The translations under genes and the position numbers were made by a program. DNA of 64,000 nucleotides from IMG/VR virus record IMGVR_UViG_3300046517_002304, positions 372,001 to 436,000 of that record; one strand, 5' to 3'. The notes beneath the pieces are model-generated. The model made no database searches and had not been told where the DNA came from. It saw only the letters and a list, made by a program, of their open reading frames with translations. Of the stretch, positions 45,081 to 54,368 are shown piece after piece; the stretch's first letter is position 1; each line of letters begins with the position of its first letter.

Positions 45081-46537
45081 CAGTCAAGATTAACTAACTG
45101 CTTTAGTCTAACGATATCTGGAGCGGTATCCCTAGCATACGTCTTTTCCAACTCATCAAAAATTTCATGTGCGGGGAAATATCTCGTATCATAATTTGGA
45201 TTCAATTTTAAATATTCGGACATAATCTTAGCATAAACATCGCGCCAGTTATTCTGGTCGCAACCGTTTAATAGACCATTTAAAATATCCTTAAAACTAG
45301 GAATATATTCCACTATAGCAGGCTCTTTAGATGAAAAGAAAAAGTAATTAAAGCCTACCCCAATAAGAACTATAAGAACACCACATATTAGCGCAACGTA
45401 CGCAAAACTCTTCCCAGAAATACTTGCAAGAACACATGGGTAATTATAGTTATCTGGTATGCTCTGAATATCTGTAATCATTGGAGTCAGTAAGCTAGAT
45501 ACATGAAAGACAGGATTTATTTTTATTAGGGTTGAACCAACCGTATTATTGTGTGTTGTAGAAACATAGTGATAGGCGCTAAATTGAAAAAGACCTGGAG
45601 TATAAACATGAAAAGGGTAAACAATACTATATGTCCAATAATCTTTATGATATGCCTTTTTTACCTGTGGATCTTTAAAAGCAATTAAGTTTTCGTCTAT
45701 CTGCTGCATTGATAAATTAGATGAAAATGTTGCGGCAGTGACGGTAGGGTTAATATCAAACACCGATTCAAATGTTAGATGTGCAATTTCCTCTTCTTCG
45801 GAAACCTTGTAGCTATTCGGAAGAGTGATTTCGCAGTGCAAGAACCGTTCTTCTCCAAGCGTTCCAGCACCATTATTTTCCAGCCATACCTTAACGCTAA
45901 CCTGTTCTACCGGCGACATAAGAGGATGCACGCTGCTAAAGAAGGCATATCCAGATAAAGTGGTTGATAGATATATAGAGTTTCTGTATACTCCGTAATC
46001 ATCCATATGAAGAATATATTCTCCTGGGGAAATAAGCGGAGTTAGCTTAAATTCAGGCGTGTGTAAAATAGATTCTAAATACTTATTAACAGCTTCTATG
46101 GCAGATGGTTGTTTGACACTAATCCGAACGCCATCAGACAAAAAATAAAGATTACCGTTTTCGTCCTTAATAACTGGTATCATTTGCTCATACTTACCCA
46201 ATACCTTAATGGTATCCCTAATGTTATCAAACTCTATCATGTAGGCATTTGCGTTATTACTCGCCCAAATCCCAAGCCTATCCTGCGGCCTAGATGCAGC
46301 GGCGTAGTCAGAAATTTCTTTTATGGAACCACTGTATTCTTTTACAATATCCTGCACAATTTCAGTGCTCAACACTCCGTAGCCTGTATTACCTTTGTAT
46401 AAAAGCATTTTCGGCTGTAGTTCCCAAACAACCAAATTTCCATTTTTGTTCTTATAAGAAAAGTCGGTATCAGTATATGTTCTAGCAAAACTCACATTAG
46501 CGAGCAATAGAGTTAACACAAAACAAATAATTCTCAT
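45065..46537 (-). CDS. secreted/membrane protein (BatD-like position)
   Basis: Signal peptide, beta-rich body, C-terminal TM; between DUF58 and vWA genes. Confidence 0.5.
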   Translation of the reverse strand: MRIICFVLTLLLANVSFARTYTDTDFSYKNKNGNLVVWELQPKMLLYKGNTGYGVLSTEIVQDIVKEYSGSIKEISDYAAASRPQDRLGIWASNNANAYMIEFDNIRDTIKVLGKYEQMIPVIKDENGNLYFLSDGVRISVKQPSAIEAVNKYLESILHTPEFKLTPLISPGEYILHMDDYGVYRNSIYLSTTLSGYAFFSSVHPLMSPVEQVSVKVWLENNGAGTLGEERFLHCEITLPNSYKVSEEEEIAHLTFESVFDINPTVTAATFSSNLSMQQIDENLIAFKDPQVKKAYHKDYWTYSIVYPFHVYTPGLFQFSAYHYVSTTHNNTVGSTLIKINPVFHVSSLLTPMITDIQSIPDNYNYPCVLASISGKSFAYVALICGVLIVLIGVGFNYFFFSSKEPAIVEYIPSFKDILNGLLNGCDQNNWRDVYAKIMSEYLKLNPNYDTRYFPAHEIFDELEKTYARDTAPDIVRLKQLVNLDCCSGA

Positions 46538-47319
46538 AATAGTTTCCTTACCAGCGGCAAAAGCGGATTCTGCGAAATAACATCTATACTAATCGGCGTA
46601 CAATTCAATCTTAATAAATCTGTATGAATTTTATCTTGCCATGCGGCATACTTGGTCTTTGACAAATTGGCGTTCACATAGCATCCGGTTTCACCGTCAA
46701 AACAAACGCATGTTCCATAATTATTTTGATTTTCATTCATTATTAATGAATAAATTTTATTATTAGCAGATATAAACCGAATAGCTCTTTTCGCCTTCTC
46801 CGTTAATTCAAAATAAAAATCTGAAATAATAAACACTAATGAATTTTCAGTTAAGCAGTTAGACAGCGCAGCCAAAGCGCTTTCTACATTAGACTTCCCA
46901 CTAAAAACTACCCCGGCAATCGCATCCTGCACTCTGCCGTAGTCATTAGTGATAGACATCTCTTGTGCCTTATCGCTAAACGTTAGTAACGATATTCTAT
47001 CTCCAGAAAACTCAGTTAAAAACAATAGGTACAACGCTGCCAGCAAACTTACATCAGATTTATCGCCGCATTCTCCAGAACCAGACGTATCTAAAACAAT
47101 ATAGACATCTAGTTGTTTTTCTGGATCATATGTCTTTGCCATTATTTCATGGCATTTAATGCTATTTTTTGTATCTATTCTCTTATCAGACGGCTGAAAC
47201 TTCTTGGCTGAATTAATGTCCTCATAGTTATCCAGTAAAGATGATAGGTGATTGCCGCTTGGATAGGCGGATAGTAGGTTTTTAGCCTTTAATTCAAGGT
47301 GTCTGAAATTGCACTTCAC
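46534..47319 (-). CDS. DUF58 / vWA-like protein
   Basis: G.HLS...KRID.K.S...KTYDPEKQLDVYIVLDTSGS, GDRISL, IISDF. Confidence 0.8.
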   Translation of the reverse strand: MKCNFRHLELKAKNLLSAYPSGNHLSSLLDNYEDINSAKKFQPSDKRIDTKNSIKCHEIMAKTYDPEKQLDVYIVLDTSGSGECGDKSDVSLLAALYLLFLTEFSGDRISLLTFSDKAQEMSITNDYGRVQDAIAGVVFSGKSNVESALAALSNCLTENSLVFIISDFYFELTEKAKRAIRFISANNKIYSLIMNENQNNYGTCVCFDGETGCYVNANLSKTKYAAWQDKIHTDLLRLNCTPISIDVISQNPLLPLVRKLL

Positions 47320-47528: not shown

Positions 47529-48011
47529 TTATCTCTTCACCAAATCTTCGGCTCGTGGAAGCCAATACAGATTACTTAAAAATCCTATATGATTGTTATA
47601 CGCATACTTCGGCTTAGTATATCCATTCTTGAATAGATTAAGCAATTCTTTAGATTTAGCCGACCTAAAATAATGACCTGGACTTTTGAGTACTGCCGAA
47701 AAAATTGACTTCCTGAAGGAGTTAGCCGACCACCACCTGCCTAAATCAACATAAATAACAAATTCTGTATCGGTAACATAAAATTTCGCTTTATTTTTAA
47801 CCTTAGCATCTTTTTCAAATTCTATAATTCTGGAAACTGCATTCTCCCAGTTCCGACTACGAAAGTAAAAATCTCTATGACCTACTAGGTATTGTTGGAG
47901 ATTATCTCTACAACCGACCCAGTTGCCGTTACTTCGCGCGAATCGCATTCTTCCTCTACCATATCCGTAAATAGCGTTAGGCACATGAAGCGTACTCTTA
48001 GGTAGTTTCAT
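47529..48011 (-). CDS. 'WxxCR' paralog family protein
   Basis: MKLP, WVGCRD, WWSANSFRKSIFSAVLKS, FKNGY, LVKR. Confidence 0.7.
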   Translation of the reverse strand: MKLPKSTLHVPNAIYGYGRGRMRFARSNGNWVGCRDNLQQYLVGHRDFYFRSRNWENAVSRIIEFEKDAKVKNKAKFYVTDTEFVIYVDLGRWWSANSFRKSIFSAVLKSPGHYFRSAKSKELLNLFKNGYTKPKYAYNNHIGFLSNLYWLPRAEDLVKR

Positions 48012-48012
48012 A

Positions 48013-48534
48013 CTAACCTTTCTTAACTAATTCTTTAGGCTCTTTTGTTTTTAAGTTCTCTAAAAATCCATCTGACTCTGTGTATTTTATAGACGGCACA
48101 TGATACCCATCAATAAATAACTTAAGCAATTTTTGCGGCTTATCACCAGCAAAATACTTCTTTCTACTTTTAAGAATGGCCGAAAAAACAGACTGTCTCA
48201 AAGAATTCGCAGACCAGAAACTTCCCATTTTAACGTAAATACAATTCAATGTCTTAGTTTGATAAAATTCAGCAGGCTCTTTTAATCCCATCATTTTTTC
48301 AACATCGCGGACTCTTTTAACGCCAGATTCCCAAGTCTTATGGTAAAAATAAAATTCATTCGTGCTATGACTCACAATATAACTATGAAAAATATCCCTG
48401 CACTCAGTCCAATAACTTGTGCGAAATTTCGCCCTATTGTTCATACTCAAGTACATTGTACTTGGTGCGGGATTACCTGTTGGCGGTAACTTCATCTTAG
48501 CCTCAAGAAATGTAAGCTGTTCCGTTTTTAACAA
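48013..48534 (-). CDS. 'WxxCR' paralog family protein
   Basis: MKLP, WTECRD, FWSANSLRQSVFSAILKS, FIDGY, LVKK; true start probably at MKLP. Confidence 0.7.
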   Translation of the reverse strand: MLKTEQLTFLEAKMKLPPTGNPAPSTMYLSMNNRAKFRTSYWTECRDIFHSYIVSHSTNEFYFYHKTWESGVKRVRDVEKMMGLKEPAEFYQTKTLNCIYVKMGSFWSANSLRQSVFSAILKSRKKYFAGDKPQKLLKLFIDGYHVPSIKYTESDGFLENLKTKEPKELVKKG

Positions 48535-48717: not shown

Positions 48718-49005
48718 TCATTTCAACTCAGCCAGTCTGCCTAAAATAATATCTTCTTTCTGAAGTCCTTCTAGCCTTGATTCTTCCTTACCATCTTTAA
48801 AAAAGATGATCGTTGGTACAGCACGAATTTTATAATGGTTCGCGGTATCAGCAGAATGCTCCGCATCAACCTTAATAATCTTGACCACCTCTTTTAATTT
48901 GTCAAGAACTGGCTCCATCATTTTGCACGGACGGCACCAACTAGTATGAAAATCTACTAAGACAATTCCGCTCTTAATTTCATCATTAAATTCTTTTAAA
49001 TGCAT
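48718..49005 (-). CDS. trxA: thioredoxin
   Basis: VDFHTSWCRPCK, IRAVPT. Confidence 0.9.
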   Translation of the reverse strand: MHLKEFNDEIKSGIVLVDFHTSWCRPCKMMEPVLDKLKEVVKIIKVDAEHSADTANHYKIRAVPTIIFFKDGKEESRLEGLQKEDIILGRLAELK

Positions 49006-49345: not shown

Positions 49346-50449
49346 TCAATCACCGTGTACTTTAACATTTCCAAGTGTTTTAGCAATTAAATCATCAATT
49401 ACATGTGATTCAGTTTGCAAATGTGGTGAAACATCAAGCAAAGAAGGAATTGCAGCGGGGTTAAGAAGCAATCGCCCTCTAAGAATTCTCGTGGCAACCG
49501 ATGCAATATCAAACGGGACAACATAATCTCTACCATTTAGCATAGCGTGCGCCATCCCGCCTGATTCAAGGTGAATCATAACACGATCATTCGCTGCGGG
49601 ATGCTGCTTAAATATCTGAATATTCTCTAAAACTTTTCTTTCAGCAACAAACAAACCGCTTTCAGCGGGATTATTAATAGCATTTAAAATTCTGGCACAG
49701 TAATAACGAATCTTGTCATCAACATAAACATGATCAAAGAAATACTCTCTTGCCTCATTTACGTCATCAAGCGTCATAACCTGCTTTAGCTCGTCAAAAT
49801 TAAAATGATGAGTTCTCTTTGCTACTTCAACTTTTTCATCTGCTGTAGTCGGCTTCATCAATACTTTATAAACAAACCTATCGCTTAAAGCTTCTGAGAG
49901 CTTGGACGTTCCCTTGTGCTGCTCTGATGGGTTAAGCGTAGCAATACAAATAAATGGATTTTTTAATTTATATGTATTATCCCCAATCGTCACCTGTTGC
50001 TCGGCCAACATTTCCAAGAATGCAGATTGCGCCTTTGGGCTAAACCGATTTACTTCATCTGCTAATAGAATATTAGCTTGATATGCGGCACCATGAACAA
50101 CGTGCTTGGTTGAATCCAGTAAATACATTTCGGAACCGACTAGATCGCCTGGTTGGGCGTCTGGAATACCAGAAATTCTCTTATTAGTTCCTGCCAGAAT
50201 AGACGAAACAGCTTTAACCAATACTGTCTTACCAGTCCCAGTACTTCCCTCAAGCAAAACGTGGCCGCAACCTAAAACTCGTTCTTTTGTTTCAACATTG
50301 AAATCTCTCTGGCCAACAGAGAATAGTCCCATGACCACCGTGTCAATCGCTTCAGTTTGGGCAACAATAATTCTCTTAAGAGCGTCCCGCAAAGGAAATA
50401 CTCTGGTCGTAAGATATTCTTCAAATTTAGCCGGACATTTAAACTTCAT
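49346..50449 (-). CDS. moxR: MoxR-family AAA+ ATPase
   Basis: GHVLLEGSTGTGKT, PD..PGDLVG, LLADEVNR..PKAQSAFLE, ATLNP.E..GT..LSEALSDRF, GRDYVVP. Confidence 0.9.
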   Translation of the reverse strand: MKFKCPAKFEEYLTTRVFPLRDALKRIIVAQTEAIDTVVMGLFSVGQRDFNVETKERVLGCGHVLLEGSTGTGKTVLVKAVSSILAGTNKRISGIPDAQPGDLVGSEMYLLDSTKHVVHGAAYQANILLADEVNRFSPKAQSAFLEMLAEQQVTIGDNTYKLKNPFICIATLNPSEQHKGTSKLSEALSDRFVYKVLMKPTTADEKVEVAKRTHHFNFDELKQVMTLDDVNEAREYFFDHVYVDDKIRYYCARILNAINNPAESGLFVAERKVLENIQIFKQHPAANDRVMIHLESGGMAHAMLNGRDYVVPFDIASVATRILRGRLLLNPAAIPSLLDVSPHLQTESHVIDDLIAKTLGNVKVHGD

Positions 50450-50451
50450 AA

Positions 50452-51039
50452 TTATTTCCTATTATAATGACAGTCAATTACATTACTACGGTAAAACTCT
50501 TTATATTCCATTATTCTTTTCTTGGATCTTAATCTGCTATATTCACCGGTATATTTTAGAACAGAAAGATACTCGTTCATCTTTTTCTTTCCCCATGCCT
50601 CAACCCACTTTTCGGCCTTCCATGCAGTTGCGATTGCTGCTTGAACATTATCTCTGTCCCTACTGTGATAAGACTTCCAAATTTTATTCCTATAGCAGTG
50701 TACGTGTCCCAACTCATGAAATACAAATGTAAACAATTCATTAATATTATAAAAAACAGAAAAATTTAAATAAATGCTTCCGCATGAAGCTGTGGACGCC
50801 TCTATTTCGCAATTCTTTCTAATAACAAATTGAACATCATGCTGTAAAGAAAGCTTAGTTAAAAGTTTTTTAATCGTATTTATATGCCTGTCCGACATAA
50901 GCAACTGACTTTTCATTAAGTCAGTTGCGCCATTATTAAATACAACCCGATTATTTTTCCACATCTTTTTGCACATTCGGCAATTAGACGTAGGCTTCCT
51001 CAAAACTCGATACTTTGGATGCTTTTTACATTTAATCAT
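50452..51039 (-). CDS. putative HExxH metallopeptidase-like protein
   Basis: FVFHELGHVH...E..(A)W. Confidence 0.45.
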   Translation of the reverse strand: MIKCKKHPKYRVLRKPTSNCRMCKKMWKNNRVVFNNGATDLMKSQLLMSDRHINTIKKLLTKLSLQHDVQFVIRKNCEIEASTASCGSIYLNFSVFYNINELFTFVFHELGHVHCYRNKIWKSYHSRDRDNVQAAIATAWKAEKWVEAWGKKKMNEYLSVLKYTGEYSRLRSKKRIMEYKEFYRSNVIDCHYNRK

Positions 51040-51431
51040 TTTACACCAATAAAGTTTTTAATTTTTAAAATAGTTTCCTGTAAATCCTGAACTTCCCATA
51101 CCTCTGGTTTATTTGAACCATTAGATGTAACGGATAAAACTTCTCCACTATTATAACATTCAATATCGGCATATAAATCACCTTTAGTAAATGCAATAGC
51201 AATCCCTTCGTCAGTAGACGGATCAATATGACTTGGCATCAAATCATATCCTGATAATAAAGCCAAAACCTTAACCGCACTATCAAACGCAACTTGATTA
51301 GGCGGGGCGCAACCTTCAGAGTGCCAATCAGGACCGAGATTCATAATTCTCTTTAACTGATCGTTCGGATCAATCGTAATAGGCTTTCTACCAAAACCAA
51401 ATAACTGCTTTAACCAATTAATCATTTAAGA

Positions 51432-52917
51432 CCCTCCTGGTATTCCAACTTTCATTGTAATTGTAGCCCTTCCGCTACCTTCAAAGTTTTAACTTCACTC
51501 CCTACGACCAGTTCTTGTAGGAAGATTTCACCCGAGAGTTTCGCGCTCTTATTTCGGATACTGCCAACAAATTCTTTTAGATCTGCCAGACTAACCCGTA
51601 GTCCTGTAAGGACGGCTTCCTCAACGTTGTCATTCAATTTCCGCCATAAAACCCATGAATGAATTCGTTTATCTTGGTACTTTCCTGCAAGGGTTCCCAA
51701 AACAAAATCCTTCACTCGTTTTTTAGCTTGTTTATAGAATGACAATTTTTCATTAAATCCAAGTCCTCTACGTCCTATCACGTAGGCCGCAGATTCATGG
51801 ATAGTAACCTTGTGCATCCAGCGATACTTGTACTTTCCGATAATACTAGTAAACGCCGGATTAACTTTTATATACTCAACTCCATGCTCAATACATTTTC
51901 GTTCTAATAATTCTATGAATTTACGCCATACAAATGGTGCTCTTCCGCGATTTATTTTTCTTCCGCTAAGACAAATCTCTTTTTTAAAGAACAAGTTCTC
52001 AAACACGATACCCTTATTCTTTTCTTTGGCATAATTAATTACTTGTTTTACTAAACATCCGATATCGTAATCTCTTTTATGGGTAGAACCATATAATAAA
52101 CGATTATTAATTAATGACTTGGATTCTACGAGGTTTCCATCTTTGCTTACTTCAGCCAAGGCGATTCTGTCAGGGTTTGTGTCTACCCCTATACAGCCGT
52201 TGCCTAATTTAGTTGTTGGTTCTGGAGCAGTAATTTGATAATCAATCTTAACATAAAAATGAGTGGCATCTTTTCTAATTAACCGAACATTATATGCTCT
52301 ACCGCTTTGAAGTAATTCTTGCAATCTTTCCTGAAACTTTTGTGGTATGAAAAGATGGTAATAAACCCATTTTTTAAAACCTATCGTAATTCTGAGCCTA
52401 TCGCCGACAATTCTGGCATTAAGATTTCCCTGCCGAGAAGCCCTTCCGCGGCAATAAATTTGCTTATTTCTATTATCTGTCCACTCCGCTTTTGTGATTT
52501 TGCCTAACTTGTAATCTTTCCATGCCTTTCTACCACCAAAGACAAGCTTATAATTACTAATTAATTTATCAATTCGCCCAAGTCTTTTTTTTAATTTGTT
52601 TTTTTGTTTTAAAGAAATCTTCGTTTTTATTTTTTGCTCTATAATTTGTCTTTTTTCGCAAAATCCTTCTATTTCTGATAAAACTTTCAAATAATAAGTT
52701 TGCCCTTCATTTACGGCGTCTGCCAATTGTCTAGAATTTAAATTATTATAAATACCCTTGGCCAATTTCTGAACCGAATAGGGCATCATCTTAGTTTTTA
52801 AAAACTTACAATATGAAAAACGAACACATGATTGAAAATCTATAATCAAACCATCTAGTTCATCAAAATTTATAGCCCATAATTCTCCATGTATAATTTT
52901 AAACATTAGACGATAAC
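51432..52917 (-). mobile_element. minimal non-autonomous TnpB element inserted in the ALDH 3' end
   Basis: Removing 51432..52917 restores ...TGG GCG CAA GGT CTT AAA TGA (WAQGLK*), whose TGA overlaps the next ATG; GG at both junctions; no transposase. Boundaries uncertain by a few nt. Confidence 0.6.
51452..52906 (-). CDS. tnpB: TnpB-related RNA-guided nuclease (IS200/IS605/IS607 accessory protein)
   Basis: RuvC-I GVDTN, RuvC-II VFENL, VNPAFTSIIG, IHESAAYVIGRRGLG; start at MFKIIHGEL (484 aa). Confidence 0.88.
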   Translation of the reverse strand: MFKIIHGELWAINFDELDGLIIDFQSCVRFSYCKFLKTKMMPYSVQKLAKGIYNNLNSRQLADAVNEGQTYYLKVLSEIEGFCEKRQIIEQKIKTKISLKQKNKLKKRLGRIDKLISNYKLVFGGRKAWKDYKLGKITKAEWTDNRNKQIYCRGRASRQGNLNARIVGDRLRITIGFKKWVYYHLFIPQKFQERLQELLQSGRAYNVRLIRKDATHFYVKIDYQITAPEPTTKLGNGCIGVDTNPDRIALAEVSKDGNLVESKSLINNRLLYGSTHKRDYDIGCLVKQVINYAKEKNKGIVFENLFFKKEICLSGRKINRGRAPFVWRKFIELLERKCIEHGVEYIKVNPAFTSIIGKYKYRWMHKVTIHESAAYVIGRRGLGFNEKLSFYKQAKKRVKDFVLGTLAGKYQDKRIHSWVLWRKLNDNVEEAVLTGLRVSLADLKEFVGSIRNKSAKLSGEIFLQELVVGSEVKTLKVAEGLQLQ

Positions 52918-54368
52918 CCTTGCGCCCATGTAATCTTATCGTCATAATTCGTAGTGACAGCAATTTTATGGCAGGTAGCATCAAAATTTCCTGATGCTGA
53001 AGGATGCCCAATTCCACTTTTCTTAATACCGCCGAACGGCACAGAACTTTCTGCACCAATACTTCCTGCATTAAAATAAATCATTCCAGAATCAATCTCA
53101 TCCTGGAACTTTTTCATCGTCCTAAAATTATCGGTTATAACGGCACAGCTTAACCCAAAATCTGTATCATTATAAATTCTAATCGCATCATCCGCATCAT
53201 CAAAAGGAATAATCGCTACGTGAGGGCCAAATACTTCCTCTTTAAGAAATCGCTTGTTTGCCCATTCGCAAAGATAAACAAATGGGGATAAGAAATAACC
53301 ATTACCCACCAATTTGTCGCCTTGTATCAAAACTCTACAAGAACGATCTTTTAGAACCATTTCATTATAAGAAACAACTCTTTCCAATGATTCTTTACTA
53401 ATTACAGGTCCGAAAAAACTTTTTTCATTACTTGGTGCGCCAATAACCAATTCCTTCACTCTGGCAATAAAATGAAGAACAAAACTATTCAATAGTTGCC
53501 TATGTACCAAAATTCGGCCAGCAGAAACACATCGCTGGCCAGCCAATTTAAATGATGAATTAACACAAGCATCAAGAGCAAGGTCTAGGTTTCCATCATC
53601 CATTACAATAACGGCTGACTTACTTCCCATCTCACAAGAACAATCTTTATTCCATTGGGTTGCACAATGCTGTTTAATTTTCATTCCAACTTCGGCGCTT
53701 CCAGTAAATAAAACATAATTTACATCACTATTCTCAACCAATAGTTTTCCGGCTTCATCTTGTCCTTGTATCATGTTGTAAACGCCCGCCGGGAAACCAG
53801 CTTCATGATACAGTTCTGCTGTTAAATTAGCTGACAAAGGCGATAGCTGACTTGGCTTATGAACTACGCAATTTCCTTCTAATATCGCTGGAGCAGAGGT
53901 CCAATGTGTGATGGCATACGGAAAATTCCATGGTGTAACACAAGCTACAACCCCACGAGGCTTGCGAATTATAGAAATTGATTTTTCAGCAACTTCTGAA
54001 GGAATCAATTCGCCTGCCGGCAGTCTTCCTCTACCGGCAGTAATCTCGCACATGTGCTTGGCTTCATTTACTTCAGCCAATGCTTCATTCTTATTCTTGC
54101 CTGTCTCCGCACATATCACTTTTATGATATCATCTTTTCTTCGCTCAATTCGGGCAGCAAGTTTAAGAAAATACTCGCCTCTGGCTGGACGACTAATTTT
54201 ACTCCATTTATGGAATGCATTTCTAGCGGCGGCTACCGATAAATCAACTCCATCTATTACTGTATTATTGACAACTTCAAGGACTTCTTCGGTAGATGGA
54301 TCTATCTTATGAAAATAACCACTTGTACCCGATGAAGTAAATTCGCCATTAATGTAATTTTTATACAT
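52899..54368 (-). CDS. aldehyde dehydrogenase family protein
   Basis: PWNFP, KPS, FTGSAEVG, EMGSK, AGQRC (catalytic Cys), EEVFGP, PFGGIKKSG. Confidence 0.95.
   Translation of the reverse strand: MYKNYINGEFTSSGTSGYFHKIDPSTEEVLEVVNNTVIDGVDLSVAAARNAFHKWSKISRPARGEYFLKLAARIERRKDDIIKVICAETGKNKNEALAEVNEAKHMCEITAGRGRLPAGELIPSEVAEKSISIIRKPRGVVACVTPWNFPYAITHWTSAPAILEGNCVVHKPSQLSPLSANLTAELYHEAGFPAGVYNMIQGQDEAGKLLVENSDVNYVLFTGSAEVGMKIKQHCATQWNKDCSCEMGSKSAVIVMDDGNLDLALDACVNSSFKLAGQRCVSAGRILVHRQLLNSFVLHFIARVKELVIGAPSNEKSFFGPVISKESLERVVSYNEMVLKDRSCRVLIQGDKLVGNGYFLSPFVYLCEWANKRFLKEEVFGPHVAIIPFDDADDAIRIYNDTDFGLSCAVITDNFRTMKKFQDEIDSGMIYFNAGSIGAESSVPFGGIKKSGIGHPSASGNFDATCHKIAVTTNYDDKITWAQGLSSNV

What the first reader, a model, noticed from the sequence alone, without database searches (positions are those of the whole stretch)
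51425..52930. Minimal transposase-less TnpB element inserted in the last codons of ALDH, supplying a replacement C-terminus
Seen: ALDH ends ...WAQ-GLSSNV*, overlapping the tnpB ATG. Just past the tnpB 3' end is CCAGGAGGGTCTTAAATGA. Deleting 51432..52917 gives WAQGLK*, whose TGA overlaps the next ATG, the usual junction style in this genome. The element has only about 11 bp upstream of tnpB, no TnpA, GG at both junctions (IS607-like), and recreates Q-G-L so ALDH stays intact. RuvC-III reads IHESAA instead of D-x-N-A-A and there is no Zn finger. Inference: an RNA-guided homing-type element. The omegaRNA would overlap the tnpB 3' end and the guide would come from the flank (about AGGGTCTTAAATGATT), targeting empty alleles in co-infecting phages. 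Alternatively it may be a catalytically altered regulator.
Basis: partly seen in the sequence, partly recalled or inferred. Interest (0 to 1): 0.72.

Follow-up and report, generated by a model that had tools for sequence, protein, structure and literature searches.

The report
TnpB guide-RNA module inside phage ALDH
A 511-kb soil phage carries a 1.5-kb piece of an IS607-type transposon, with its RNA-guided nuclease gene tnpB and most of its guide-RNA scaffold but no transposase and no left end, inserted in the last codons of an aldehyde dehydrogenase gene; it is a clear, well-preserved example of a known kind of element, not a new kind.

Summary
Removing window 51432..52917 (1,486 bp, GG at both junctions) restores ALDH ...WAQGLK*. 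Almost all close ALDH homologues end this way, and a related phage contig (L009) has nearly the same DNA at that point.

The inserted gene belongs to TnpB clade RIIIr-4, described by Altae-Tran et al. in 2023. In that clade the RuvC-III aspartate is a histidine, the zinc finger is absent, and members are enriched in viruses. The odd motif is therefore the clade's hallmark, not decay.

Relatives carry an IS607-type MerR-resolvase TnpA, a left end with an inverted repeat, and a right end finishing in ...CAGG. The last ~255 nt hold a structured RNA with strong covariation: 60 pairs, 43 with compensatory changes.

The window copy has no TnpA and no left end, and the genome has no second copy. Seven of its eight RNA modules are intact, but the guide-proximal hairpin is lost.

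Its composition matches the phage. Its synonymous sites are saturated against relatives, except where the RNA lies. This suggests long-term selection on both protein and RNA.

RNA-guided homing is the leading explanation but is untested. No empty allele was found.

The parts
52899..54368 (-). Aldehyde dehydrogenase gene (489 aa). Its last 5 codons and stop (52899..52916) are read from the inserted DNA.
   Evidence: Pfam Aldedh, E 4.9e-130, residues 16-461. Homologues end in QG[LM]K*.
51432..52917 (-). Inserted segment of 1,486 bp, consisting of tnpB plus the right end. GG lies at both junctions (52918-52919 and 51432-51433), so the boundary can be slid by 2 nt.
   Evidence: Direct reading. Removing it restores WAQGLK* and matches the L009 DNA at 19 of 21 positions.
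51452..52906 (-). tnpB-like gene (484 aa) of clade RIIIr-4. The start codon overlaps the ALDH stop by 8 nt, which suggests translational coupling. There is no SD motif of its own.
   Evidence: TIGR01766 scores 49.6 bits, above its cut-off; guided_TnpB scores 56.6, below its cut-off of 100. hhalign to a canonical TnpB profile gives probability 96.4%, E 1.2e-9. Foldseek matches Cas12f at E 1.9e-9 and ISDra2 TnpB at E 3.4e-5. More than 300 homologues were found.
52181..52183 (-). Codon of D242 in GVDTNPDR, the RuvC-I aspartate.
   Evidence: Invariant in alignment A1. Aligned to the GIDLG aspartate of canonical TnpB.
51998..52000 (-). Codon of E303 in VFENL, the RuvC-II glutamate.
   Evidence: Invariant in alignment A1. 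Aligned to the EDL glutamate of canonical TnpB.
51794..51799 (-). Codons of H370-E371 in IHESAA. This is the RuvC-III position, where a histidine replaces the canonical aspartate. No zinc finger lies between NPAFTS and this motif.
   Evidence: Invariant in alignment A1. The clade description is in PMC10691335. The Pfam TNB domain is matched only at positions 1-28 of 60. The D-to-H alignment itself was made by eye.
51436..51690 (-). omegaRNA-type structured region. It overlaps the last ~240 nt of tnpB plus 16 nt beyond the stop. In the window copy, 7 of its 8 modules (6 hairpin helices plus a long-range stem, which has one C.C mismatch) are kept, with 44 of 48 pairs formed.
   Evidence: RNAalifold on 30 elements gives 60 pairs, 43 of them with compensatory changes. 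On the shorter alignment, 95% of cells are paired, against 46% when slid, and 0 of 500 shuffles reach this. Synonymous-site constraint gives p = 1.9e-6.
51445..51459 (-). Remnant of the guide-proximal terminal hairpin, which has 12 bp in relatives. The 5' arm is deleted (13-nt gap), and only a weak 5-bp alternative stem is possible.
   Evidence: 3 of 12 pairs are kept in the family register. nhmmer aligns only model positions 2-119 of 158.
51433..51440 (-). The end of the right end: CCAGG (51436-51440), which is the family consensus terminus, followed by extra nt. Together they form AGGAGG (51433-51438), an SD motif 7 nt before the ATG of the next gene.
   Evidence: Right-end termini of 32 elements. 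Direct reading.
51422..51433 (-). The original ALDH terminus, GGTCTTAAATGA (G L K stop), now separated from ALDH. It overlaps the start codon of the next gene. If the RNA is functional, this is also where the guide would begin.
51036..51425 (-). Downstream gene (129 aa), an ORFan. Its SD-to-start spacer was the insertion site.
   Evidence: No homologue in 5.8 billion clusters. No Pfam, NCBIfam or PHROG hit.

Best explanation
What it is (confidence about 0.9): a left-truncated IS607-family element. An ancestor of the full type seen in relatives inserted at a GG. That full type has a left end, a small ORF, a MerR-resolvase tnpA, a variable ORF, tnpB and an omegaRNA/right end. The GG lies between a weak SD motif (AAGG) and the start codon of the 129-aa gene, which places it inside the last three codons of ALDH.

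Everything to the left of tnpB was later lost, up to the junction (inferred). Three things followed:
- ALDH acquired the tail LSSNV* in place of LK*.
- tnpB became translationally coupled to ALDH.
- The right-end tip now supplies AGGAGG to the downstream gene.

With no left end and no recombinase in the genome, it cannot transpose.

How it most likely works now (confidence about 0.4-0.45, inferred): the tnpB mRNA is processed into an RNA of about 255 nt. Its 3' extension (AGGGUCUUAAAUGAUU...) is the guide. The D242/E303/H370 nuclease cuts phage genomes that carry the uninterrupted ALDH/129-aa junction, and recombination with the occupied genome copies the module in. This would be free-standing homing, as in T-even seg/mob genes.

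The module's long persistence is better explained by this, or by another RNA-guided role, than by neutrality.
For: Insertion and boundaries.

Family identity:
- TnpB fold and profile matches.
- Clade RIIIr-4 features D-E-H and no zinc finger are invariant in 18 members and are published as a clade predicted to be active (PMC10691335).

IS607 context in relatives:
- TnpA.
- Left-end inverted repeat and GGAGG left flank in 10 of 10 elements.
- Right end ...CAGG, and an ORF start within 12 nt (observed at 0-10 nt) in 21 of 32 elements against 18% at random positions.
- IS607 inserts at GG and its TAMs are AGGAG/GAGGG.

omegaRNA: covariation. The window keeps 44 of 48 pairs in 7 of 8 modules.

Selection on the window lineage:
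- tnpB GC3 is 0.29, like its neighbours (0.25-0.34). The closest relatives' tnpB has GC3 0.50-0.73.
- Third-position identity to L005 is 0.38 before residue 386 and 0.73 after it (Fisher p = 1.9e-6).
- Private deviations at otherwise invariant residues number 4 of 80, within the family range of 0-7.

Immobility: no left end; no TnpA, no Resolvase and no second copy.
Against: Against current guide-RNA function:
- The 12-bp guide-proximal hairpin, present in 29 of 29 relatives, is lost in the window.
- A covarying long-range pair is C.C in the window.
- Four extra nt separate the consensus scaffold end from the host sequence.
- The TAM-position sequence is CAAGG, not GGAGG.
- With the homology-based scaffold end, the guide would mismatch the reconstructed empty site at position 2.

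Against homing specifically:
- No empty allele was found in four metagenomes. These were low-depth contigs, so the evidence is weak.
- None was found in IMG/VR by exact pattern.
- The nearest empty site is in a phage only 65% identical, which also lacks the 129-aa gene that would carry most of the target.

Other gaps:
- No RNA data are available.
- No RIIIr-4 enzyme has been tested in the literature I could search.
- The order of events (full insertion, then deletion) is inferred only.
Confidence: 0.5

Rival explanations
1. Inert, stranded remnant. The module has lost all activity as well as its transposase, and persists because it is hard to remove. A deletion must be exact to give ALDH a stop codon and leave the downstream gene a ribosome-binding site. 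Huge phages also tolerate extra DNA.
For: - No left end, no TnpA, single copy.
- The terminal hairpin is lost and a long-range pair is broken.
- The TAM is not the consensus.
- Three substitutions lie in the otherwise invariant FNDVR motif, which reads PYSVQ in the window.
- Other huge phages hold plainly decayed copies with the right end retained (L014, L012, L114).
Against: - A 484-codon frame is intact in a genome of 39% G+C.
- All clade-invariant catalytic residues are kept.
- Composition is fully adapted to the phage, while synonymous sites in the RNA region stayed conserved. This is not expected if constraint ended long ago.
- The number of deviations from invariant residues is ordinary for the family.
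Confidence: 0.3
2. Domesticated module. The TnpB-RNA complex serves the phage, for example as an RNA-guided regulator or as a weapon against competing elements. It would be expressed with ALDH through translational coupling, and its target would not be the empty allele.
For: - Long-term retention without a transposase.
- Tight integration into the operon, with an 8-nt overlap with ALDH and no promoter or terminator signal above background.
- Exaptation of TnpB is documented, both as TldR and as inactivated branches (PMC10691335; PMC10705468, listed).
Against: - The catalytic residues are those of the mobile clade, not lost as in TldR.
- The flank-derived guide matches only its own locus in the 511-kb genome with up to 3 mismatches.
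- There is no conserved partner gene, and relatives sit in unrelated contexts.
- The host genome is unknown, so host targets cannot be searched.
Confidence: 0.15
3. Not an insertion. ALDH-tnpB is the ancestral arrangement, and the GLK* reading after tnpB is coincidence.
For: No empty allele of this same phage was found.
Against: - 11 nt (GG.CTTAAATGA) are identical to the ALDH terminus of the related phage L009, at exactly the place and frame that restore the family-wide C-terminus.
- Relatives of tnpB lie in many unrelated sites with transposase genes.
Confidence: 0.02

Closest known systems
TnpB clade RIIIr-4 (Altae-Tran et al. 2023, PNAS, PMC10691335)
   Same: The RuvC-III aspartate is replaced by histidine, the C4 zinc finger is absent, and the clade is enriched in viruses. 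It is associated with serine-recombinase TnpA in some branches, and a conserved RNA scaffold follows the gene.
   Different: Placement in the published tree was not tested. The window copy has no transposase. Like its three nearest relatives, it carries a 42-aa helical insertion at residues ~75-116.
IS607-family insertion sequences with TnpB/omegaRNA (e.g. the RAGATH-18 reRNA TnpBs, ISFba1, PDB 8IAZ)
   Same: GG at both junctions with no target duplication. The guide RNA overlaps the 3' end of tnpB, and the flank serves as guide. Relatives have G-rich, SD-like left flanks (GGAGG), comparable to the published TAMs AGGAG/GAGGG.
   Different: No TnpA and no left end. The nuclease is D-E-H without a zinc finger. 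The RNA matches no Rfam family, RAGATH-18 included. The left flank is CAAGG.
Free-standing homing endonuclease genes of T-even phages (seg, mob) and TnpB-only IStrons
   Same: A nuclease gene without a transposase sits between conserved phage genes and could spread by cutting the allele that lacks it during co-infection. Reviews note that TnpB is kept intact after loss of TnpA (PMC13565253).
   Different: Target recognition would be by RNA, not by protein. No cleavage or inheritance data exist for this clade or for any phage-borne TnpB I could find.
TldR, TnpB-like nuclease-dead repressors of phages
   Same: A TnpB relative encoded by a phage without a transposase.
   Different: TldR proteins have lost RuvC residues or the C-terminus and carry guides to host promoters. 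Here the clade-typical catalytic residues are all present, and the guide matches only the module's own flank.

Membership tests
TnpB / Cas12 superfamily | WED-REC-RuvC fold and sequence-profile similarity | tested here: met
   Foldseek to Cas12f at E 1.9e-9 and to ISDra2 TnpB (8EXA) at E 3.4e-5. hhalign to a canonical TnpB profile gives probability 96.4%, E 1.2e-9. TIGR01766 scores 49.6 bits against a cut-off of 32.
TnpB / Cas12 superfamily | Score above NCBIfam 'guided_TnpB' (NF040570) or the Pfam TNB-domain cut-off | tested here: not met
   NF040570 scores 56.6 against a cut-off of 100. PF07282 scores 26.1 against 26.3, and only the first half of the domain is matched. This is as expected for a clade without the zinc finger.
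TnpB clade RIIIr-4 | RuvC-I Asp and RuvC-II Glu are kept, and the RuvC-III Asp is replaced by His | tested here: met
   D242, E303 and H370 are invariant in 18 members. D242 and E303 align to the canonical residues. H370 was aligned to the canonical D of DRDVNA by inspection.
TnpB clade RIIIr-4 | No C4 zinc finger between RuvC-II and RuvC-III | tested here: met
   There is no Cys in NPAFTSIIGKYKYRWMHKVTIHESAA or in any aligned member. The profile alignment stops at the TS that precedes the finger.
TnpB clade RIIIr-4 | Placement inside the published clade in a phylogeny | not tested
IS607-family insertion sequence | Serine-recombinase (MerR + Resolvase) TnpA | tested here: not met
   Absent from the window and from the whole 511-kb genome. 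Present next to about 45 of 175 related loci.
IS607-family insertion sequence | Integration at a GG, element terminating in GG, no target duplication | tested here: met
   GG at both junctions and exactly 2 nt of shared sequence. The rule is taken from PMC13565253.
IS607-family insertion sequence | Both transposon ends, with the left end carrying repeats related to the right end | tested here: not met
   No left-end-like sequence lies upstream of tnpB in the window (score 16, which is background). Elements with TnpA score 24-46.
OMEGA system (TnpB + omegaRNA) | Conserved structured RNA overlapping the 3' end of tnpB and ending at the transposon boundary | tested here: met
   Family level: 60 pairs, 43 compensatory, with controls. 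Window: 44 of 48 pairs in 7 of 8 modules, and synonymous-site constraint with p = 1.9e-6.
OMEGA system (TnpB + omegaRNA) | Intact guide-adjacent module of the scaffold in this copy | tested here: not met
   The terminal 12-bp helix is reduced to 3 of 12 pairs, and the long-range pair is C.C.
OMEGA system (TnpB + omegaRNA) | The RNA is made, is bound by TnpB, and directs TAM-dependent DNA cleavage | not testable with these tools
   No RNA runs were laid. Complex prediction does not score protein-RNA pairs.
Homing endonuclease behaviour | An empty allele exists in the population and is converted | tested here: inconclusive
   Only occupied junctions were seen in contigs of four metagenomes at 2-8x depth. 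There was no exact empty-site match in IMG/VR. An empty site exists only in a phage at 65% identity.
TldR-type nuclease-dead TnpB | Loss of RuvC catalytic residues or C-terminal truncation | tested here: not met
   D242, E303 and H370-E371 are kept, and about 110 residues follow RuvC-III.

The most novel reading that the evidence does not exclude
A transposase-less RIIIr-4 TnpB with its omegaRNA acts in huge phages as a free-standing, RNA-guided homing endonuclease. During co-infection it cuts genomes that carry the uninterrupted SD-to-start junction and is copied in by recombination. This would make it the RNA-guided counterpart of the T4 seg/mob genes. It would use a D-E-H active site without a zinc finger, and a TAM that coincides with the ribosome-binding site.
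Probability: 0.35. Interest if true: 0.65.

Novelty: new member of a known kind. Interest (0 to 1): 0.4.

Why it matters
This is a precisely resolved insertion. The empty-site sequence can be reconstructed to the base, so it gives a ready-made natural substrate for the first biochemical test of the untested RIIIr-4 clade, which has histidine in RuvC-III and no zinc finger.

It also shows that such modules can persist in a huge phage for a long time without any transposase, with signs of selection on both protein and RNA. That bears on the open question of what keeps tnpB-only copies alive, and on whether RNA-guided homing operates between phages.

As a side result, this IS607 subgroup sits between ribosome-binding sites and start codons. 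The right-end tip then replaces the SD motif, which explains how it can live in tightly packed phage operons.

Tried and rejected
- DNA similarity of the locus to 50,697 GenBank phages: no match.
- Sequence search of PDB with the protein and with the profile: nothing relevant.
- Rfam at E <= 1 on 51300..53000: no family.
- Folding the window RNA alone: z = -0.5, uninformative on its own.
- Promoter and terminator scan: at background level.
- Search for an empty allele. Contigs of four metagenomes show only occupied junctions. The exact 20-mer of the empty site is absent from IMG/VR. The 129-aa neighbour is an ORFan, so no closer relatives could be reached through it.
- Search for other targets of the guide in the phage genome: only the self match.
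- Complex prediction of TnpB with the RNA: not folded by the tool, so it is no evidence either way.
- Alternative reconstruction. It puts the right-end boundary at the consensus CCAGG and gives an ancestral ALDH ending in WAQGGS* with a perfect AAGGAGG motif.
- The idea that the 129-aa and 195-aa genes came in as cargo: rejected. The ALDH terminus lies directly after tnpB and overlaps the 129-aa start codon.
- 'Catalytically dead regulator': not favoured, because the D-E-H set is clade-wide and includes mobile, multi-copy members in bacterial genomes.
Full report
SETTING

The window is bases 372001-436000 of a 511,233-bp IMG/VR virus record with terminal repeats. The same sequence is present in six soil and rhizosphere metagenomes. 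All genes around the finding are on the minus strand and are tightly packed, often with 4-nt ATGA overlaps.

Yes.
- ALDH (52899..54368; Pfam Aldedh, E 4.9e-130) ends ...TGG GCG CAA GGG TTA TCG TCT AAT GTT TAA.
- The tnpB-like ORF starts at 52906 and overlaps the ALDH stop. It ends at 51452.
- It is followed by AAGTTGGAATACCAGGAGGGTCTTAAATGA, in which the ATG starts a 129-aa gene.
- Removing 51432..52917 (1,486 bp) gives CAA GGT CTT AAA TGA, which reads QGLK*.

Two independent results show this is the ancestral state.
- Among the nearest ALDH homologues, 50 of the 59 listed end in QG[LM]K*. The two closest (67% and 56% identity) end in WAQGLK.
- The closest homologue lies on a 2.8-kb contig (L009) of a related phage, in which three syntenic genes are 65-66% identical to the window's. 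Its ALDH ends TGGGCGCAGGGACTTAAATGA. That is 19 of 21 identical to the reconstructed window sequence, and both differences are synonymous.

The test was run, and the finding survives it. The shared sequence at the two junctions is exactly GG.

WHAT IS THE PROTEIN?

It matches TnpB models only weakly:
- TIGR01766 scores 49.6 bits, above its cut-off.
- guided_TnpB scores 56.6, against a cut-off of 100.
- Only the first half of the Pfam TNB domain is matched.

It does have more than 300 homologues of 430-490 aa. In an alignment of 18 of them, D242 (GVDTNPDR), E303 (VFENL) and H370-E371 (HESAA) are invariant, and none has zinc-finger cysteines.

A profile comparison with canonical TnpBs taken from bacterial genomes gives probability 96.4% and E 1.2e-9. 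It aligns D242 and E303 with the RuvC-I and RuvC-II residues, and it stops at the TS that precedes the zinc finger. An AlphaFold model (mean pLDDT 75) matches Cas12f, Cas12k and TnpB structures.

This combination is the published major clade RIIIr-4. That clade has the RuvC-III aspartate changed to histidine, no C4 zinc finger, and over-representation in viruses. Its authors predicted it to be active because the change is conserved (PMC10691335). I found no experimental study of the clade.

WHAT ELEMENT DOES IT BELONG TO?

In relatives from contigs of 100-590 kb that look like huge phages, the gene is preceded by three things: a small conserved ORF, a MerR+Resolvase serine recombinase (the IS607 type of TnpA), and a variable small ORF. 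About 45 of 175 fetched loci have such a TnpA.

Their left ends carry a ~30-bp inverted copy of the right end and are preceded by GGAGG in 10 of 10 cases. Their right ends finish with AAA(G/C/T)CAGG.

In 21 of 32 elements an ORF of at least 40 aa starts within 12 nt after the right end (observed at 0-10 nt), against 18% at random positions. This subgroup therefore sits between a Shine-Dalgarno (SD) ribosome-binding motif and its start codon.

That agrees with published statements that IS607 integrates at or after GG and that IS607 TnpB TAMs are mostly AGGAG or GAGGG (PMC13565253). (A TAM is the short motif TnpB requires next to its target.)

The window fits the same rule. The insertion lies 8 nt before the ATG of the 129-aa gene, after a weak SD motif (AAGG). 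Because the two genes overlap, that position is also the end of ALDH.

THE RNA

Alignment of the last ~300 nt of 30 distinct elements gives a consensus structure of 60 pairs, 43 of which show compensatory changes.

For the 30 pairs nearest the end:
- 95% of cells are paired, against 43-54% when partners are slid.
- 200 cells show double changes, against 54 in shuffles.
- None of 500 shuffles reaches the observed values.

The structure ends at the element boundary, as an omegaRNA does. No Rfam family matches it.

In the window copy, 44 of 48 pairs of the first seven modules are formed. However, the 12-bp guide-proximal hairpin, present in all 29 other sequences, has lost its 5' arm. One covarying long-range pair is C.C. 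nhmmer aligns only the first 119 of 158 positions. The window also has four extra nt (GGAG) between the consensus terminus CCA and the crossover GG. These create AGGAGG 7 nt before the downstream ATG.

IS IT MOBILE?

No.
- No left-end-like sequence lies upstream of tnpB; only 11 nt separate it from the junction.
- The genome has no IS607 TnpA, no Resolvase-domain gene, no second tnpB and no second copy of the RNA.

Other huge phages hold a spectrum of deletion derivatives:
- copies that keep the left end but have lost tnpA (L110-L112);
- copies reduced to the 3' part of tnpB plus the right end (L014, L012, L114).

The window copy is the variant in which everything left of tnpB is gone. How the left junction ended exactly at the GG is not resolved. 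A recombinase-mediated deletion to a pseudo-site is possible. So is an ordinary deletion filtered by selection for a functional ALDH.

IS IT MAINTAINED?

- The window tnpB has GC3 of 0.29, like its neighbours (0.25-0.34). The closest relatives' tnpB has GC3 of 0.50-0.73, often far above their own flanks.
- Between the window and L005, third positions of identical residues agree in 38% of cases before residue 386, which is near saturation. From residue 386 on, where the RNA lies, they agree in 73% (43/59 against 88/231, Fisher p = 1.9e-6).
- The frame is intact.
- The number of private deviations at otherwise invariant residues (4 of 80) is ordinary for the family. Three of the four fall in one motif, however: FNDVR reads PYSVQ.

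Together these suggest a long residence in an AT-rich genome, with selection on both protein and RNA.

MECHANISM AND RIVALS

The identity is secure. For present function I rank three readings:
- RNA-guided homing or retention, about 0.4.
- Inert remnant, about 0.3. In this reading it is kept because any deletion must be exact: ALDH takes its stop codon from the insert, and the next gene takes its SD motif from it.
- Another, domesticated RNA-guided role, about 0.15.

For homing: selection without a transposase, a flank-derived guide, and the precedent of IS607 restorative homing and of TnpB-only IStrons.

Against homing:
- The terminal hairpin is lost.
- The TAM-position sequence is CAAGG rather than GGAGG.
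- No empty allele was seen in four low-depth metagenomes or in IMG/VR.
- The flank-derived guide has no target other than its own locus in the phage.

VERDICT

This is a new member of a known kind: an IS607-family, RIIIr-4 TnpB/omegaRNA module, left-truncated and lacking its transposase.

Interest is moderate. Its value is as a base-exact natural substrate for testing an uncharacterised TnpB clade, and for testing the idea of RNA-guided homing between phages.

Noticed in passing
L005, L006, L007, L010, L016, L096, L104, L124, L126 (left ends); 32 right ends listed: This IS607/RIIIr-4 subgroup sits between an SD motif and a start codon. GGAGG precedes the left end in 10 of 10 elements. An ORF of at least 40 aa starts within 12 nt after the right end (observed at 0-10 nt) in 21 of 32 elements, against 18% at random positions. 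The right-end tip (CAGG) then takes over as the SD motif. L006 and L096 alone do not settle whether GGAGG belongs to the host or to the element.
   Followed up: partly
A3 columns 66-69 with 363-366; window 51687-51690 with 51437-51440: A long-range stem joins the last four scaffold bases before the terminal G to a site ~250 nt upstream inside tnpB. One of its pairs covaries (GC in 12 sequences, CG in 10). This resembles the pseudoknot next to the guide in known omegaRNAs. In the window the pair is C.C.
   Followed up: partly
L014:3400-3936, L012:3400-4031, L114:800-1706; L013 and L015 lie in the same 436-kb viral contig as L011: Other huge phages carry 5'-truncated tnpB fragments (starting at residue ~200-350) with a complete RNA/right end. 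One phage has a full copy plus two fragments. The retained RNAs could act as extra guides in trans, or be kept only as the 5' leader of the next gene.
   Followed up: partly
L005:3793-3999, L006:3811-4041, L007:3696-3872: A conserved small ORF of 58-76 aa (M..I.EVEVSELTKEYAV.NGERIEFD.PWEETP...DFV.WLTNI) lies between the left end and tnpA in full-length elements. Its function is unknown.
   Followed up: no
window 52560-52690 (residues ~75-116 of TnpB): The window protein and its three nearest relatives share a 42-aa lysine-rich insertion that the rest of the family lacks. The model predicts it as a long helical hairpin in the REC region.
   Followed up: no
window 52768-52782 (residues 42-46): The motif FNDVR is invariant in 17 relatives but reads PYSVQ in the window protein. 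It lies in the N-terminal lobe, so a change of TAM preference is conceivable. This was not tested.
   Followed up: no
window 50452-51425 compared with L009:1875-1961: The related phage L009 has only 87 nt between ALDH and the MoxR-type AAA ATPase. The window has two extra genes there (129 aa and 195 aa). The 129-aa protein has no homologue in 5.8 billion clusters.
   Followed up: partly
window 47529-48534: Two adjacent genes (160 and 173 aa) are clear paralogues of each other, a tandem duplication. They lie between a vWA-like gene (46534-47319) and a thioredoxin (48718-49005), near the MoxR ATPase (49346-50449).
   Followed up: no
Genome-contig loci L021-L095: More distant members of the same H-E, zinc-finger-less family (25-36% identity) are multi-copy in Bacillaceae, Halanaerobacter, Thermocrinis, Sulfurihydrogenibium and Asgard archaea, mostly without a TnpA nearby. 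Cultured Thermus phages (Lalka8, phiLo) and Lak megaphages have weak relatives.
   Followed up: no
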